Below are positions 5,271-15,045 of a stretch of 15,045 bases of DNA, piece after piece. The stretch is from NCBI GenBank assembly GCA_033442325.1, contig JAWQFM010000036.1:222841-237885 (forward strand), written 5' to 3'. The position numbers and the translations under genes are program-made. The notes below the pieces were generated by a model. That model ran no database searches. It was not told the origin of the DNA and was given only the letters and a program-made list of their open reading frames with translations. Position 1 is the stretch's first letter, and each line of letters starts with the position of its first letter. Origin of the DNA: Salpingoeca rosetta. Taxonomy: Eukaryota; Protista; Choanoflagellata.

Positions 5271-6320
5271 ATGCAGATGATGAACACGGGCACACCTGGC
5301 GGCGCGCGACGCGCCAGTCACTCGCAAGATGGGCGCCCGCCAGCCAAGAAGGCCCGACGCAAGCGGTTTGTGTGGAACGACACGCTCACTGCACGCGCGC
5401 TGGAGTGCTGCATCAGCCTGCGCATTCCCTGCAAGCATGGCAAGCACGGCGTCTCCACGCTGTGGGACCAGGTGGCCACGCACATCAACGAGATTACGCT
5501 GCTGCGCCCGCACCACGCGCAACACGACACAACCGCCACCGCCAACACCGGCGGTAGTGGTGGCGCCCACAACAACAACAACAACGACAACAACGTCAGC
5601 AGCAGCAGCAGCAACAACAACCATGGCGGTAGTGGCAGCGTGCCACACGCAGGCACGCCCGTGACGGAAAGCCCCAACAGCAGCACGCTGTCCAGCGCAC
5701 CGCCGCCGTCATCATCAACGCCAGGCAGCACCGCTGGTGGCGATGACAGCGTGTCAGGCGCAGCAACAGCGACACCAACGAGCACTGCACCAGCAGTCAT
5801 GCCACAAACAACGACAACGGCAACATCAGCCGCATCCGGCACGCCATCGGCAGCGGCGGTCATGACACCGGGCAGCATGCATATGGGGACATCACCCCGC
5901 ACGCTGGCAGACGTGAACCCGGAGGACCTGTTGACCGGCGACCGCGTGCGCAAACGCATCATGAGCGTGATTGATAAGGTGGCACGCACGGACCGCCTGC
6001 AGCAGCAGCACGCCCTGCAGGTTGCAGCGGAGGGCACGGCGCTGGGCCTGGCGCCTCCGGAAGAGGACTTCTTCTCGGAGGAGGTGGTGCAACTTGCACG
6101 GAGGTTCATTATGATGCGTGGCGAGGCATTCCACCTGCGTGACGAGGGTGGCAGCGGCAGCGGCGGCGGTGCTGGTGACGTGTCCATGACGTCGATGGAT
6201 TTGAGCCCGCTTCCTTCGACCAACACCAGCATAATGGGTGGTGGTGGTGGTGTTGCCGGCGCACACGCGCACATGCACGCGCCCGCCACACACGCACACG
6301 CGCACCCTTCCCCATTCCCT

Positions 6321-6389
<69 letters not shown>

Positions 6390-7640
6390 GCGTTGTTGCT
6401 GCCACCGCACTCGCACGCCCCCGTGCACGCACATGCGCACGCGCACGCACCAGCAACGTCTGCAGCAGCAGCGGCAACCGCGTCAACACCAACATCAGCA
6501 GCAGCATCAACAGCAATGACAGTGACATCTGCAGCCGAGACAGCACCACCAGCAGCAACGGCCGGTGGCCATGATGGGCATGATGGTGATGGTGATGACG
6601 GTAACGGCGATGGTGGTGATGGTGGTGGTGGTGGTGGTGGCAGCGGCCGTGCGAGTCCAATGGAAGAACGAGGCAATAACAGCACAGGTGATGAGGGGAG
6701 AGCGCAGGACGCAGCTGCAGCCGCCACACACCACCAAGCCACAGCCGCAACCAGCAACACCGCCAACAGCACCGCCAACAGCAGCAACGGCGATGATGGC
6801 AGCACCAGCAGCAGCGGTGGTGATGGGATGATGAATACGGGTCGCGTTGCGCGCGGCAGCCGGGTGAGTTGTCGTTTGCATTGTTGTGTCTGTGATTGGG
6901 GGGGGGGAAGTGGGTGGGTGGTGGTGTTGACACGTGCGTATGTGTTTGTGTTGTTTTATCAAAGAAGCGCACGCACACAATCACACACACATACACACAC
7001 ACACACTAACACACACACACACACACACTAACACACACACACACACGAACACACACACGCACTCACTGCCTCTCACCAGGGGTCGGCTGGGCGGCGCGCG
7101 GCACGGGCACAGGGGCTGCCAACACCAGCACCAGCGACAATGGCGATGGCGAGTGCAATGGGGCAGGAGGCGCTGCAACACGACCGCCTCACGTCTCTCC
7201 TCTACAACGCCGTCAACCGCCTGCTCGACAAGTGAGTTGCGTCATCACGTCAGGCTGTGTCGCGGTGTGTGTGTCTGTGTGTCTGTGTGTCTGTGTGTCT
7301 GTGTGTCTGTGTGTGCGTGTGTGTGTGTTTTATGCTTGAGTTTCATTGCTGTTTGCTTCAATCTCGAACCCCCAACTCGTCTCATGCACAACCCCCTCCG
7401 CCCCCCCCCCCCACACACATCTACTCAACACCCTCCCTTCCCTCCCCTCCCCTCCATTGTCTCTGCGTGCACAGGTTTGATTCGCTTGAGGCGCGGCTGG
7501 GGGACGTGCAGCGCGTGGTGAAGCAGCAGGAGGAGATGCAGAAGGTGATGGTGAACTTGGACGCGTTCATGTCGCACGCCATGATGGCACAGCAGACGAC
7601 CCACCACCAGCACCAGCACCACCACCAGCAGCAGCAGCAG

Positions 7641-10324: not shown

Positions 10325-11118
10325 ATGCCGCGTGCAACAAACACACGCGCGGCTTGGCTTTCGGCCTGCGTGCTCCTCTTTACCCTCGTTGCCTCTTGGC
10401 AACAGCCCATCGTCAACGCCGTGAGTGCCACCGCCTCACTGCATGCGCTTCGTCTTTGTGTTCTCTACCTCTCTGCTTCTCTGCTTCTCCTTTGTTCCTC
10501 TGCTCCTCCTTCTCAGCAAGACAAGCACGCGAAGAAGCATCTCCACCAACAGCCTGCTCACCATTGTTCCATTCACGCGTGCTGCCTGACAGGAGGTTTC
10601 CCTTGGCGATGCTCTGACCGCGTCGGAATTCCTTGATGAGCTGGTGCGTGCATGTGCTCGCTTCCTCGCTTCCTCGCTTGCTTTCTTGCTTGTATGCATG
10701 GTGGTGGCACGAGCTGTCCATCACCCAGAGCGAGCGGGCAATGCCTTGCCGTCCGTGGCGCTGTCGCCCTTGTGTTTAAAGAAAGCTCGGTTCTCAACAA
10801 CGCATATCCCTCATCCGACCACCCCCCTCCCCATCTCACCCTTCACCCTTCTTCTTCGAATGCAAAATCGCTCCACAGGCCCTCAACGACTGCGCCCAAC
10901 TGACTGACTCCAACTCCGGGTACTACTTCACAAGCGGCCAGGAAACAGGCGTCTCTCGCACACGCTGCGACACAGGTGAGGGCGCGTGCCACCGTGCGTG
11001 GCTTGCTTTGTCTTCTCCTTTGTGACGTGAAGGAGTGTTGCTGCCCTCTTCAGCCTGTTTGCCTCTCTCTGCTTCATTTATTGTGACTGATGACGGATTT
11101 GCCTGCATGCAACCCCCC

Positions 11119-11156
<38 letters not shown>

Positions 11157-14100
11157 GTTCCTGCCAGTGCCGTCGTTTCAGCGAGTGCAGCGATGGATGT
11201 AAGTCGGTCTTCAACTGGCTGTGTTTCATGCGTGCATGCATGCACATACGCTGAGAGCATTGGCGAGCGCATGCAAGGGATGGCTGGCCGCTTAGCTCCG
11301 CGTGCCCCCCTTCCGCTCCCCCCACACATCGTGCTCACAACTGAATGAACTTCCCTGTCCACCCCACATTGGCATTATCATCATCATCTAGCTTGCCTTG
11401 GCATCAACCGCTGCACCGACAGCACCGGCACCGGCTGCAAGGCCATCGCCAACTGCACCCAGACCGTCTTTGAGACCACATTCGAGGTGCGATTGTCGCG
11501 GACAGTCACCGCGCTGTGTTGCTTCACAAGGCCTCACCTTACGTGCGTTGGTTGGTGTGGGACAAGTCATAACCCTTTCCTTCCCAATGTCTCACCACTT
11601 TTCCGTGATTGTGTGCCCGATGTCCCATTCCATCTCCTCAGGTTGTCGTTGACTGCCGCGAGCCGCTTGATGAGCGCGATGAGGCCGGTATCGACTTCTT
11701 TGGCATGCGCTGGAAGCAGGCCCTCGCTGAGGACTGCAGCATTGGACGCGTGAGTTGCTCACGCGCCTGTGTCTATGTTGTGTGATTGTGTTGAGTTTGT
11801 GTGTACGCGTCTGCGTGTGTGCTTTGGTGTGTGCAGTTGTTTTCCGTATCAATACTGATCGCTCGCTTGGTCGTTACCACCTTTGTTTGCGTCCTCCCTT
11901 CATTGTCATTGCCTCACACACTCATCCCCCTTTGCGCCTCTTTCATATCCACAGGTGTGCCGCTACAATGGCGACAGCGCAGCCACGATTGAGGTCATCA
12001 ACAGCACCACCTTCCGCACCACCACCCTCAACCCAGCGCACGTGGACCACCTCACCTTCTGCGCACAGACGCAAACCTTCAAGTTCAACCGCTGTGAAGT
12101 CCTGAGCGTGCGCTTGATCCCAGACACAACAACAACGACAACAACCACAACGACGACCACTACTACTACCACCACCACGACCACGACGACAACCACCACA
12201 ACTACAACGACAACGACGACCACGACCACAACAACTACGACAACCACCCTCCCACCCTGCTCCTACAACTGTGAGGACGAGTTTGACAACTGCGTCGGCG
12301 TGGTAAGACAGCCAACAGTGTGCCGTTGTTTGCGTGTCTACCTATGTATGCGGGCATGAATGTTGTGTGTTTGCTGCGTGGCGTAGCTTGCTCGCCTGCA
12401 TGCACCTGTTGCCCATTGGCCTCGAACCACAACGCTCATTTGGCGCCTCGCTCACTCCGCCTTCTCACCACCACCACCACCACGCCCACTTTAACGCCAA
12501 CAGGCCATGTTCAGCGCCAACGTTCGCGACACCTTCACGGACTGCGTTGCGGCCACGGATCACTACAGCATCTCAAACCTGATTGACTTTGGCATCTGCG
12601 TTGGCGAGTGCGACGAAATCTCAAGCTCAAGCAACCTCACCCAGATGCAGGCCGTGCTCGAGTGCTAGTGAGTTGGCTGTGGTGCTGCGTGCGCGTGCAT
12701 TCGCGTTGCTGCTGCCTGATTGCACACAAACCACTTTGTTGTGCCGTGTTCACTCGCTTCATGTGCTCGCGTGTGCTTCGCCGCGAACCTGCTTCCGGCA
12801 TCGCCCTCCCACACCATCTTACCCACACATGCATGCACGCCACCAACAGCGTGAACTGCGCCAACGACACGGCGGACATTGGCTGCGAGGTGACCACCAC
12901 CACTACGACAACCACGACCACAACCACCCTTCCCTACGACTTGCTGGATGAAGTCAGCGACTACGCCACATTTGTCTCCAACCAGGTGTGTCACTCTCGC
13001 TGTGATTGCGCCCAGGCAAACGTGTTACGGTGCATTGCAGTCTATGTGCATGTCTGTGCATGATGTGCATTCGTGCTCTGTTGTGTGTGACGCTTATTCC
13101 CGCTGTTGTCCCCCACTCACTACTCACCATCACATACTCACGTACCCGTCATGTACTCCCCTTCATTCTCACCTTGTCCGTGGTTAGACGCGCGCTGGCT
13201 GCACGCGTTCCGTGTTGTCGACCAACGGCTACTACCTCCTCTCTGGCGCAGCTTCTGGCGTGCAGCAAGCCGAGTGTGACCGCGGTGGCGGCTGCAGCTG
13301 CTTCCACTTTGAGGAATGCAACGACCCCGAGGGTGAGTGCCAACTTGCCTTGCTGTTGCTGCAGATAGTGCTGATTGACACTCTTCTGTACTTGCGTACG
13401 TGATGTGTGTTCAAGTAACTGCTTGCAAGCAAAGTAACTCGCCCACTAATGTCGTTGCTGCAGTTGTTTTGCTGATCACTCAATCACTCACAAACATGGC
13501 TTTCGCATCTACCATGTACATCCTGTTTCGGATGTGTCACAATGCAGGCATGACATGCATGGAGGTGTACGAGTGCGAGACCAAGAGCGGCAGCGCCGAC
13601 AGCTGCTACACCTTTGACGAGTGCGTGGAGGATGACTTCCACATTGAGGCCATCATGGCAGTGTCGTGCAACGATAGCCAGCTGCTGGAGACCTTCAACA
13701 ACACCATGCTGGACGACTTTGCTGCCGACCTCAAGGCATCGCTTATCGAGGACTGCAGCGACCTTCCTCTGGTGCGTTTGTGATTGTGAGAACGGCTGTT
13801 GTTGCGCTTTTGCGCTGCTGTGTGGCACCAATGCTGGCTTGCTTGGTGCATGGTGTTGCTTTCGCTACATTGAACTGACGTTGTTTTCCCTTGCTTCCTG
13901 TTACGTCCACCACCCAACGCACGCGTGTACAGCAATGCCATGTCAAGTCTGATGATTACACGGACATTGAGGTTCTGGACAACAGCACCTTTGTCATCGG
14001 CGTCTACAAGCCAAACGTGAGTTGAGCTTGCCTTAATGTGATGTGGGCTGAGATCTTTGTCGTTTGTGGCATGGTATTTGCACTGTACAACCGTTCCACG

Positions 14101-14856
14101 AGCCTCCTACAGCTCACGAACACATGCTCACGAACACACACACACACACGCACACACTACCACTACCACACTGGCAAACACGAACAGGACATTGCCCGCC
14201 TTTCGAGCTGCGCGGAGCTGAGCTCCTTCACCTTCCACGGTTGCACCGTCGAGCTGGTGGAGCGATATGATGCGGAGGCGCAGGTCATTGTGACGCAGCG
14301 GTTTGTGGTGACGGGCGTCAACGAGTCCCAGGTCAACACCACCGCCATCAAGCAGCGGCTGTTGGCCAAGCTGCCGCAGTTCACTGCCGACCAGATTGAG
14401 GTGCGCATTGAACGGATCAGCCGTCGTGCAACGAACGATGGCTTCATTGTTGTCATCGAGTACACCGCCGATGACGAGGATGCTGAGGAGGTGGTGAACA
14501 CCGCCAACGAGGTGGCAAACAACGGCACCCTCACTGAGGCGATCGAGGAAGACACGGGCGAAATGGTGGATACGATGCAGGAAGGCGATGTCATGATTGA
14601 CTTGGTCACCACTACCACTACGACGACTACTACTACTACTACCACAACAACGACGACGACTACCACAACGACAACTACGACTACGACAACTACGACTACG
14701 ACAACTACGACTACGACAACCACGACTACGACAACTACGACTACGACAACCACCACAACGACAACTACGACTACGACAACCACCACAACGACTACGACGA
14801 CTACGACTACGACAACAACAACAACTACTACCACCACTACTACTACTACGACGACA

Positions 14857-14894
<38 letters not shown>

Positions 14895-15045
14895 CACTAC
14901 CACCACTACCACAACCACAACCACAACCACCACTACTACGACTACTACGACGACGACTACCACCACTACCACAACCACTACGACGACGACGACTACTACG
15001 ACTACACCACACTACAACGACACTACCACTACAACGACGACCACA
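10325..15045 (+). CDS. Secreted/cell-surface mucin-like glycoprotein with duplicated Cys-rich domain, SEA-like domain and poly-Thr tracts; 3'-truncated (>=817 aa)
   Basis: 13 phase-consistent GT-AG exons: 10325-10420, 10593-10643, 10879-10975, 11154-11198, 11392-11486, 11642-11749, 11955-12302, 12504-12667, 12850-12985, 13188-13332, 13548-13771, 13933-14016, 14188->15045. No in-frame stop. Exon 1 is a signal peptide (MPRATNTRAAWLSACVLLFTLVASWQQPIVNA). Many N-X-S/T sequons. The internal duplication independently supports the exon joins. Confidence 0.88.
12126..12248 (+). repeat. Coding poly-Thr tract (41 Thr, mixed ACN codons)
   Basis: In frame within exon 11955-12302; a second 12-Thr tract lies at 12893-12928. 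Confidence 0.93.
14608..15045 (+). repeat. Coding poly-Thr tract (133 uninterrupted Thr, then PHYND, then Thr to window end)
   Basis: ACN codons in frame with exon 14188; includes tandem 15-nt units ACAACTACGACTACG from ~14671. Confidence 0.93.

What the first reader, a model, noticed from the sequence alone, without database searches (positions are those of the whole stretch)
10879..14270. Unrecognised ~170-aa domain present twice with all 14 cysteines conserved
Seen after splicing. A1: ALNDCAQLTDSNSGYYFTSGQETGVSRTRCDTGGSCQCRRFSECSDGSCLGINRCTDSTGTGCKAIANCTQTVFETTFEVVVDCREP...WKQALAEDCSIGRVCRYNGDSAATIEVINSTTF...LTFCAQTQTFKFNRCEV. A2: TRAGCTRSVLSTNGYYLLSGAASGVQQAECDRGGGCSCFHFEECNDPEGMTCMEVYECETKSGSADSCYTFDECVEDDFHIEAIMAVSCNDS...LKASLIEDCSDLPLQCHVKSDDYTDIEVLDNSTF...LSSCAELSSFTFHGCTV. 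Shared motifs: GYYxxSG, GV, CDxGGxCxCxxFxEC, LxEDCS, IEVxxxxTF, LxxCAxxxxFxFxxCxV. The spacing does not match EGF, LDLa, TSP, VWC or CysD as I know them. The second half looks like a beta-alpha-beta-beta-alpha-beta (SEA/ferredoxin-like) unit, which is inference.
Basis: partly seen in the sequence, partly recalled or inferred. Interest (0 to 1): 0.75.

Follow-up and report, generated by a model that had tools for sequence, protein, structure and literature searches.

The report
Two-copy 14-cysteine domain in choanoflagellate mucin
An unannotated, spliced gene of the choanoflagellate Salpingoeca rosetta encodes a secreted mucin-like protein carrying two copies of a 14-cysteine extracellular domain; the domain belongs to a family of at least 20 loci in this genome, its second half is predicted to fold like the SEA/SoMP modules of animal surface proteins, and relatives are already tagged by a very recent Pfam entry.

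Summary
Two intron positions are shared by the copies. Exons are 97.5% identical to a paralogous gene copy against 86.8% for introns, so the exons are real and under constraint.

The domain is not a one-off. S. rosetta has at least 20 loci with the A1-type, four with the A2-type and a single-exon relative behind a signal peptide. Relatives also occur in Barroeca monosierra and in Tara Oceans contigs. Only six true hits appeared among 1.84 billion representative proteins.

The local Pfam gives no hit (EGF, LDLa, TSP1, VWC, CysD, SEA and EB included). However, precomputed annotation tags relatives with PF26750 "Triquetra_S-S", a newer Pfam entry I could neither run nor read. "Unrecognised" is therefore only partly right.

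An AlphaFold model of the Barroeca homologue (best model pLDDT 84) shows a cysteine-rich beta-hairpin half and a ferredoxin-like half. The second half's best match is the SorCS2 SoMP domain (Z 9.0), with SEA-like ectodomains at Z 5.4-6.2. This half also occurs alone next to dermatopontin domains.

Verdict: a real, lineage-restricted composite extracellular module of unknown function and moderate interest. The spliced A1 and A2 sequences were never joined for a search or a fold.

The parts
10325..10420 (+). Exon 1: start codon and signal-peptide-like N-terminus (32 codons, hydrophobic core), followed by a GTGAGT donor
   Evidence: the signal-peptide reading is by eye and no predictor was run
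10593..10643 (+). Exon 2: conserved pre-motif (LGDxLxxxEFL type) that precedes A1
   Evidence: The same motif lies before the domain in P0006 and P0007. In the model it forms strand 19-21 and helix 27-34, where the 10-residue blocks 21-30 and 31-40 average pLDDT 94 and 85
10879..10975 (+). A1 exon a: cysteines 1-2 and the GYYFTSG motif
11154..11198 (+). A1 exon b: cysteines 3-5 (GGSCQCxxFSEC)
11392..11486 (+). A1 exon c: cysteines 6-9
11642..11749 (+). A1 exon d: cysteines 10-11; first strand and first helix of the ferredoxin-like half (ends in EDCS)
11955..12101 (+). A1 exon e, 5' part: cysteines 12-14; hairpin with an N-x-T sequon, second helix and last strand
12126..12248 (+). Poly-threonine linker 1 (41 Thr)
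12249..12892 (+). Module B between the two copies: a further conserved cysteine-rich module. It spans the 3' end of exon e, exon f (12504-12667) and the 5' part of exon g (12850-12892)
   Evidence: conserved after the A1-type domain in PTSG_01494 and many paralogues
12893..12928 (+). Poly-threonine linker 2 (12 Thr)
12929..12985 (+). Probable pre-motif of A2 (end of exon g)
   Evidence: equivalence to exon 2 is by position and by eye only
13188..13332 (+). A2 exon h: cysteines 1-5 (equals A1 exons a+b)
13548..13771 (+). A2 exon i: cysteines 6-11 (equals A1 exons c+d)
13933..14016 (+). A2 exon j: cysteine 12 and the hairpin with an N-x-T sequon
14188..14250 (+). A2, 5' part of exon k: cysteines 13-14
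14251..14607 (+). Cysteine-free alpha/beta tail module directly after A2, in the same exon
   Evidence: no Pfam or PDB sequence match
14608..15045 (+). Poly-threonine linker 3. It runs to the window end and then into an assembly gap

Best explanation
The window holds the 5' part of an unannotated S. rosetta gene for a secreted, heavily O-glycosylated (poly-Thr) mucin-like protein. Its folded parts include two diverged copies of a 14-cysteine extracellular domain of about 190 residues.

The domain belongs to a family that, as far as the searches reached, is confined to S. rosetta, Barroeca monosierra and uncultured marine organisms. It is composite:
- a short strand-helix pre-motif;
- a disulfide-rich half made of long beta-hairpins (cysteines 1-9);
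- a disulfide-stapled ferredoxin-like beta-alpha-beta-beta-alpha-beta half (cysteines 10-14), of the kind that sits beside mucin stalks or the membrane in animal surface proteins (SorCS SoMP, IA-2, EpCAM/Trop2 C-domain, SEA).

A1 and A2 arose by an old internal duplication, since they share intron positions and are about 30-40% identical where alignable.

Most likely role (inferred, not shown): a rigid, protease-resistant, N-glycosylated knob that spaces the mucin stalks and offers a protein- or glycan-binding surface in the cell coat or extracellular matrix. No catalytic function is indicated.
For: - Gene structure, cysteine count and motifs.
- Copy-to-copy similarity.
- Exons 97.5% against introns 86.8% identical to the C24 paralogue.
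- Family size in the genome: at least 20 loci for the last A1 exon at E < 3e-9, 80 exon matches to PTSG_01494, and A2-type, C21 and C15 copies.
- Restricted distribution: 7 hits, 6 of them true, in 1.84 billion representative proteins.
- Secretory context: signal-peptide-like exon 1, a signal peptide directly before the domain in the C21 gene and in P0002/P0004, poly-Thr runs, and conserved N-x-T sequons.
- Fold: best model pLDDT 84.1. Residues 109-202 match the SorCS2 SoMP domain at Z 9.0, rmsd 2.4 A over 86 residues, and SEA-like ectodomains at Z 5.4-6.2. SoMP is described as RRM-like and membrane-proximal in PMC6065357.
- Second half as an independent module: two tandem copies after two dermatopontin domains in PTSG_10372.
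- Pfam PF26750 on relatives.
Against: - The model is of a Barroeca homologue, not of A1 or A2, because the joined spliced sequences were not folded.
- Only one of the five models was confident; the others had pLDDT 45-63. The alignment was shallow and made largely of exon fragments.
- The first half folded alone gave pLDDT 38, so its fold and its independence are untested.
- Foldseek found nothing at E <= 1e-3. Z 9 for a ferredoxin-like sandwich is only a little above what unrelated models reach (notes).
- No expression, localisation or binding data were found.
- The C-terminus of the window's gene is lost in an assembly gap, so secreted versus membrane-anchored is open.
Confidence: 0.6

Rival explanations
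1. It is one indivisible, new 170-190-residue fold. The ferredoxin-like look of the second half would be superficial, and the first half could not exist without it.
For: In the A1-type, A2-type and C21-type genes the two halves always occur together with all 14 cysteines. The first half alone did not fold in AlphaFold. The SorCS2 alignment reaches back to model residue 65.
Against: The second half occurs alone and in tandem in PTSG_10372, and in at least six further loci, with its own four or five cysteines. Dozens of ferredoxin-like domains align to residues 109-202 at rmsd 2.4-3.3 A. The failed fold had a 15-row alignment with only four rows covering the middle, so it is weak evidence.
Confidence: 0.2
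2. The second half is a true, diverged SEA domain that, as in animal mucins, cleaves itself and holds the two chains together under mechanical load.
For: It has a beta-alpha-beta-beta-alpha-beta fold next to poly-Thr mucin stretches. MUC16, TMPRSS6 and Gpr126 SEA domains are among the structural matches at Z 5.4-5.8.
Against: There is no Pfam SEA hit on any piece or homologue, even at E 10. No G/SVVV-type cleavage motif is seen in the hairpin of A1 or A2 (direct reading). The module is disulfide-stapled, which canonical SEA is not. SEA matches rank below SoMP and many RRM domains.
Confidence: 0.05
3. The domain is mainly a ligand-binding module (a lectin-like or adhesion domain) that recognises glycans or partner proteins in colony matrix, theca or prey capture, rather than a structural spacer.
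For: The family is expanded to at least 20 loci with diverging surfaces and invariant cysteines. Invariant glycines and aromatic residues lie in the first hairpin (GYYF). The second-half module is associated with dermatopontin, a matrix-binding domain. The C24 paralogue carries beta-propeller-like repeats.
Against: No similarity to any known lectin or adhesion family was found in Pfam or by fold search. No binding data exist. This reading is not exclusive of the best explanation.
Confidence: 0.25
4. The similarity is chance among cysteine-rich, low-complexity open frames in non-coding DNA, or the locus is a dead pseudogene.
For: The gene is not in the public S. rosetta protein set, since no representative matches exon i at 50% identity or more. 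The middle exons of A1 and A2 give no BLASTP match.
Against: All splice sites are canonical and frames stay open. Exons are far better conserved than introns against the C24 copy. Homologues are annotated or assembled in S. rosetta, Barroeca and marine samples. The 14 cysteines are invariant.
Confidence: 0.02

Closest known systems
Pfam PF26750 'Triquetra_S-S' (an entry newer than the local Pfam copy)
   Same: Precomputed annotation puts it on relatives of the window's domain: the marine homologue P0002 with an unmarked hit (E <= 1e-5), PTSG_01494 faintly, and the Barroeca protein P0007. The window's exons are homologous to these proteins.
   Different: I could not run or read the model and found no paper on it. 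It is therefore unknown which part of the 190 residues it covers and whether A1 or A2 would pass its threshold. A fragment with only cysteines 7-11 (P0010) has no hit, and PTSG_10372, which has only second-half modules, has none either. This hints that the entry covers the first half.
SorCS membrane-proximal (SoMP) domain of SorCS2 (PDB 6ffy, 6fg9)
   Same: It is the best structural match to the second half: Z 9.0 and 8.7, rmsd 2.4 A over 86 residues. It is an extracellular RRM/ferredoxin-like module (PMC6065357).
   Different: Sequence identity is 12% and there is no sequence-level match. SoMP follows PKD domains next to the membrane of a Vps10p receptor, whereas here the module follows a cysteine-rich hairpin half inside a mucin. 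Homology is not shown.
SEA domain and SEA-like ectodomains (MUC16 SEA, TMPRSS6, Gpr126, IA-2/phogrin, EpCAM/Trop2 C-domain)
   Same: The same beta-alpha-beta-beta-alpha-beta sandwich, extracellular and often beside O-glycosylated stalks. Z is 5.4-6.2 with rmsd 2.8-3.2 A over 75-86 residues.
   Different: No Pfam SEA hit, no autoproteolysis motif, and five conserved cysteines that canonical SEA lacks.
C-terminal modules of S. rosetta PTSG_10372 (dermatopontin protein)
   Same: True sequence relatives of the second half, with E 4.5e-28 to the profile built partly from them. They share the pattern C ... Q..L..F....L..F ... DC.
   Different: They lack the first, hairpin half, occur in tandem and follow two dermatopontin domains.
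EB module (PF01683), the UniRef name of paralogue PTSG_13186
   Same: Both are cysteine-rich and extracellular. UniRef calls PTSG_13186 an 'EB domain-containing protein'.
   Different: The name is not reproduced: there is no EB hit on PTSG_13186 even at E 10.

Membership tests
Pfam PF26750 Triquetra_S-S | Significant match of A1 or A2 to the family's HMM | not testable with these tools
   The model is absent from the local library. The joined A1 and A2 sequences were also not searched, by rule.
Pfam PF26750 Triquetra_S-S | Homology of the window's copies to proteins that carry the hit | tested here: met
   tblastn of P0007 to exon i gives 1.8e-6, and of P0006 to exon h 2.6e-5. P0002 and the C21 gene align over the whole domain. 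PF26750 is recorded on P0002, P0004 and P0007.
SEA domain (PF01390) | Match to the Pfam SEA model | tested here: not met
   No hit on exon pieces or on full-length homologues at E up to 10.
SEA domain (PF01390) | Beta-alpha-beta-beta-alpha-beta sandwich | tested here: met
   Shown in the model of homologue P0007. SEA domains align at Z 5.4-5.8. This holds for a homologue, in one confident model out of five.
SEA domain (PF01390) | G/SVVV-type autoproteolytic motif between strands 2 and 3 | tested here: not met
   Direct reading of exons e and j: no such motif in A1 or A2.
SorCS SoMP domain | Fold similarity over the whole SoMP domain | tested here: met
   6ffy_A residues 954-1064, Z 9.0, rmsd 2.4 A, 86 residues aligned. 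SoMP is defined as residues 958-1066.
SorCS SoMP domain | Sequence relationship and Vps10p-10CC-PKD context | tested here: not met
   12% identity. The profile search of PDB sequences found only chance RNase A rows at E >= 0.049. No Vps10p or PKD domain was found by Pfam in the pieces searched (window exons; the 862-residue downstream open frame of the C24 paralogue).
EB module (PF01683) | Match to the Pfam EB model | tested here: not met
   No hit on PTSG_13186, P0007, P0004 or the C21 open frame at E up to 10.
EGF, LDLa, TSP1, VWC, CysD (Mucin2_WxxW) | Match to the respective Pfam models | tested here: not met
   no hits at all on the domain.

The most novel reading that the evidence does not exclude
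The second half of the domain is a true homologue of the animal SoMP/SEA-type membrane-proximal modules. On this reading the mucin-stalk-plus-ferredoxin-like-knob design of animal surface mucins and receptors predates animals. The 14-cysteine composite would then be a choanoflagellate elaboration of it that builds the cell coat or colony matrix.
Probability: 0.12. Interest if true: 0.6.

Novelty: new member of a known kind. Interest (0 to 1): 0.4.

Why it matters
Choanoflagellates are the closest living relatives of animals, and their secreted matrix governs colony formation and attachment. A family of at least 20 mucin-like genes built around one uncharacterised, disulfide-rich module is a sizeable and largely unannotated part of that matrix toolkit. 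The window's gene and its near-copies are missing from the public protein set. The predicted SEA/SoMP-like half gives a concrete structural hypothesis linking choanoflagellate and animal mucin architecture. The practical gains are modest: better gene models, a defined domain boundary for expression and structure work, and a candidate set for matrix genetics in S. rosetta.

Tried and rejected
- Internal repeat within the first half. MAFFT kept placing the exon-c-type pieces on the exon-a/b region, which suggested a repeat. hhalign of the two alignments gave probability 1%, so this was rejected.
- Folding the first half alone (C21 gene) gave pLDDT 38 and was unusable.
- Foldseek against the PDB gave nothing at E <= 1e-3.
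- A profile search of PDB sequences gave only chance RNase A rows.
- The ESM Atlas gave no usable hit for P0007 or P0002.
- Word-based protein searches with P0007, alignment A2 and P0004 returned only the queries themselves, or P0002 and P0007. Length limits and low-complexity words probably hid the long mucin paralogues.
- Literature searches for PF26750, 'triquetra' and the PTSG identifiers found nothing relevant.
- The clam protein P0005 in the representative search is a Sushi-repeat protein and a spurious hit.
- The 862-residue repeat region of the C24 paralogue gave no Pfam hit.
Full report
**What is in the window**

The region is eukaryotic and intron-rich, with (CA)n runs in the introns. 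Translating each exon in frame gives a gene that starts at 10325. Exon 1 is signal-peptide-like and ends at a GTGAGT donor. A 17-codon exon 2 (10593-10643) follows. The rest of the gene, in order, is:
- five exons of copy A1 (10879-12101);
- 41 threonines;
- a further cysteine-rich module B (12249-12892, three exon parts);
- 12 threonines;
- four exons of copy A2 (13188-14250);
- a cysteine-free alpha/beta tail (14251-14607);
- a threonine run to the window end.

The final threonine run continues into an assembly gap. All splice borders are AG/GT.

Everything on A1 and A2 was done exon by exon by reference, and whole-domain work used natural full-length homologues.

Yes.

Exon-level BLASTP between the copies gives 1e-6, 9e-5 and 2e-3, in collinear order. 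The middle exons give no BLASTP match, but they sit in one family alignment with conserved cysteines.

Two introns are at equivalent positions and phases in A1 and A2, read directly.

Against the paralogous gene copy on contig 24, exons are 97.5% identical over 1,377 aligned bases. Introns are 86.8% identical over 1,492 aligned bases. This supports both the exon model and purifying selection.

**Organism and family**

The genome has 55.4 Mb in 68 contigs.

Within the genome I found the following:
- The last A1 exon has 20 matches at E < 3e-9, counting itself.
- PTSG_01494 matches 80 exon-sized places.
- A2-type copies lie at C24, at C36:488930 and, at 51% identity, at C15.
- A related gene on C21 has a signal peptide followed directly by most of the domain in one exon.
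- A third group of loci has only the second half.

A profile of the exon-i region was searched against 1.84 billion representative proteins and found seven hits. Three are S. rosetta proteins, one is from Barroeca monosierra, two are from marine metagenome assemblies, and one is a spurious clam Sushi protein.

No representative matches exon i closely. The window's gene and its near-copies therefore seem absent from public protein sets.

**Known families**

The local Pfam gives nothing on exon pieces or on full-length homologues, even at E 10. This covers EGF, LDLa, TSP1, VWC, CysD, SEA and EB. The UniRef name 'EB domain-containing' for PTSG_13186 is not reproduced.

However, precomputed annotations list PF26750 'Triquetra_S-S' on three relatives:
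- P0002, with an unmarked hit, meaning E <= 1e-5;
- PTSG_01494, faintly;
- the Barroeca protein P0007.

That model is not in the local library, and I found no paper about it. Its extent on the domain is therefore unknown.

Two observations hint that it covers the first half. A fragment with only cysteines 7-11 has no hit. PTSG_10372, which has only second-half modules, has none either. This is inference.

**Structure**

I folded the Barroeca homologue P0007, which is 202 residues and carries all 14 cysteines. The alignment had 35 rows, made of natural proteins and exon pieces by reference.

The best model has pLDDT 84.1 and pTM 0.60, but the other four models reach only 45-63. The model shows, in order:
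- a strand (residues 19-21) and a helix (27-34) formed by the pre-motif;
- long beta-hairpins over residues 39-121;
- a beta-alpha-beta-beta-alpha-beta unit over residues 113-201.

Foldseek found nothing significant in the PDB. The Foldseek-independent search and the second-look alignment both place residues 109-202 on ferredoxin/RRM-like domains. The matches were:
- SorCS2 SoMP at Z 9.0 and 8.7, rmsd 2.4 A over 86 residues;
- IA-2/phogrin ectodomains at Z 5.7-6.2;
- EpCAM/Trop2 C-domains at Z 5.5-6.0;
- MUC16, TMPRSS6 and Gpr126 SEA domains at Z 5.4-5.8.

SoMP is described as an RRM-like, membrane-proximal domain with a processing site (PMC6065357). Ferredoxin-like sandwiches are common, so this shows a fold class and not homology.

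The first half, folded alone from the C21 gene, failed with pLDDT 38. Its fold remains untested.

**Composite nature**

The second half occurs twice in tandem after two dermatopontin domains in PTSG_10372, and alone in several other loci. These copies have the same helix motif ending in DC and the same later cysteines. It is therefore a mobile module in its own right. The first half was never seen alone.

**Function**

Nothing is shown experimentally. Several features place the domain outside the cell:
- the signal peptides;
- the threonine runs;
- conserved N-x-T sequons;
- seven probable disulfides;
- dermatopontin in one relative;
- about 860 residues of beta-propeller-like repeats downstream in the C24 paralogue.

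My best reading is a rigid, glycosylated knob between mucin stalks that may also bind partners. A dedicated binding role is a live alternative.

**Novelty and score**

This is a real, lineage-restricted extracellular domain family. The window adds two unannotated members, a corrected domain boundary and a structural hypothesis for the second half. Because relatives already carry a Pfam accession, I file it as a new member of a known, though uncharacterised, kind. Interest is moderate.

Noticed in passing
window 12249-12302, 12504-12667, 12850-12892: Module B: a second conserved cysteine-rich module (about 9 cysteines) between the two copies. The same module follows the A1-type domain in PTSG_01494 and in at least a dozen paralogous loci. 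No Pfam hit.
   Followed up: partly
window 14251-14607: A cysteine-free stretch of about 119 residues right after A2, whose alternating pattern looks like another beta-alpha-beta-beta-alpha-beta unit (by eye). It has a 78%-identical DNA paralogue at C15:816594-816977. No Pfam or PDB sequence match.
   Followed up: partly
G000:C24:651892-655088 (-), C36:488269-489554 (+), C37:8004-8405 (+): Recent segmental copies of parts of this gene at 91-94% DNA identity. The C37 copy ends a short 8.4-kb contig and underlies the truncated model PTSG_13186.
   Followed up: partly
L068:4860-7445 (-), that is G000:C24 downstream of the paralogue: After about 200 threonine-rich residues, the C24 paralogue continues in one open frame of 862 residues with two kinds of beta-propeller-like repeats. 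One is of the DAFVA..DG..W..QFGT type and the other of the ADNGLIY..P....VL.ID type. No Pfam hit.
   Followed up: partly
L067 (G000:C36:237400-247000): The window's gene runs into an assembly gap of about 2.6 kb inside its third threonine run, so its C-terminus is unknown.
   Followed up: no
P0001 = PTSG_10372, L036: An S. rosetta protein with two dermatopontin domains (Pfam DERM, E 7e-74) followed by two copies of the second-half module.
   Followed up: partly
L035, L070-L072 (Tara Oceans contigs, ERZ908002, ERZ908596, ERZ27287911, ERZ27287571): Short marine metagenome contigs encode relatives of the domain. This suggests uncultured marine relatives of S. rosetta carry the family.
   Followed up: no
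window 5271-7031 (+): A long open frame rich in poly-Q, poly-Ala and poly-Gly. Another note of the scan reads a Myb/SANT-like domain here.
   Followed up: no
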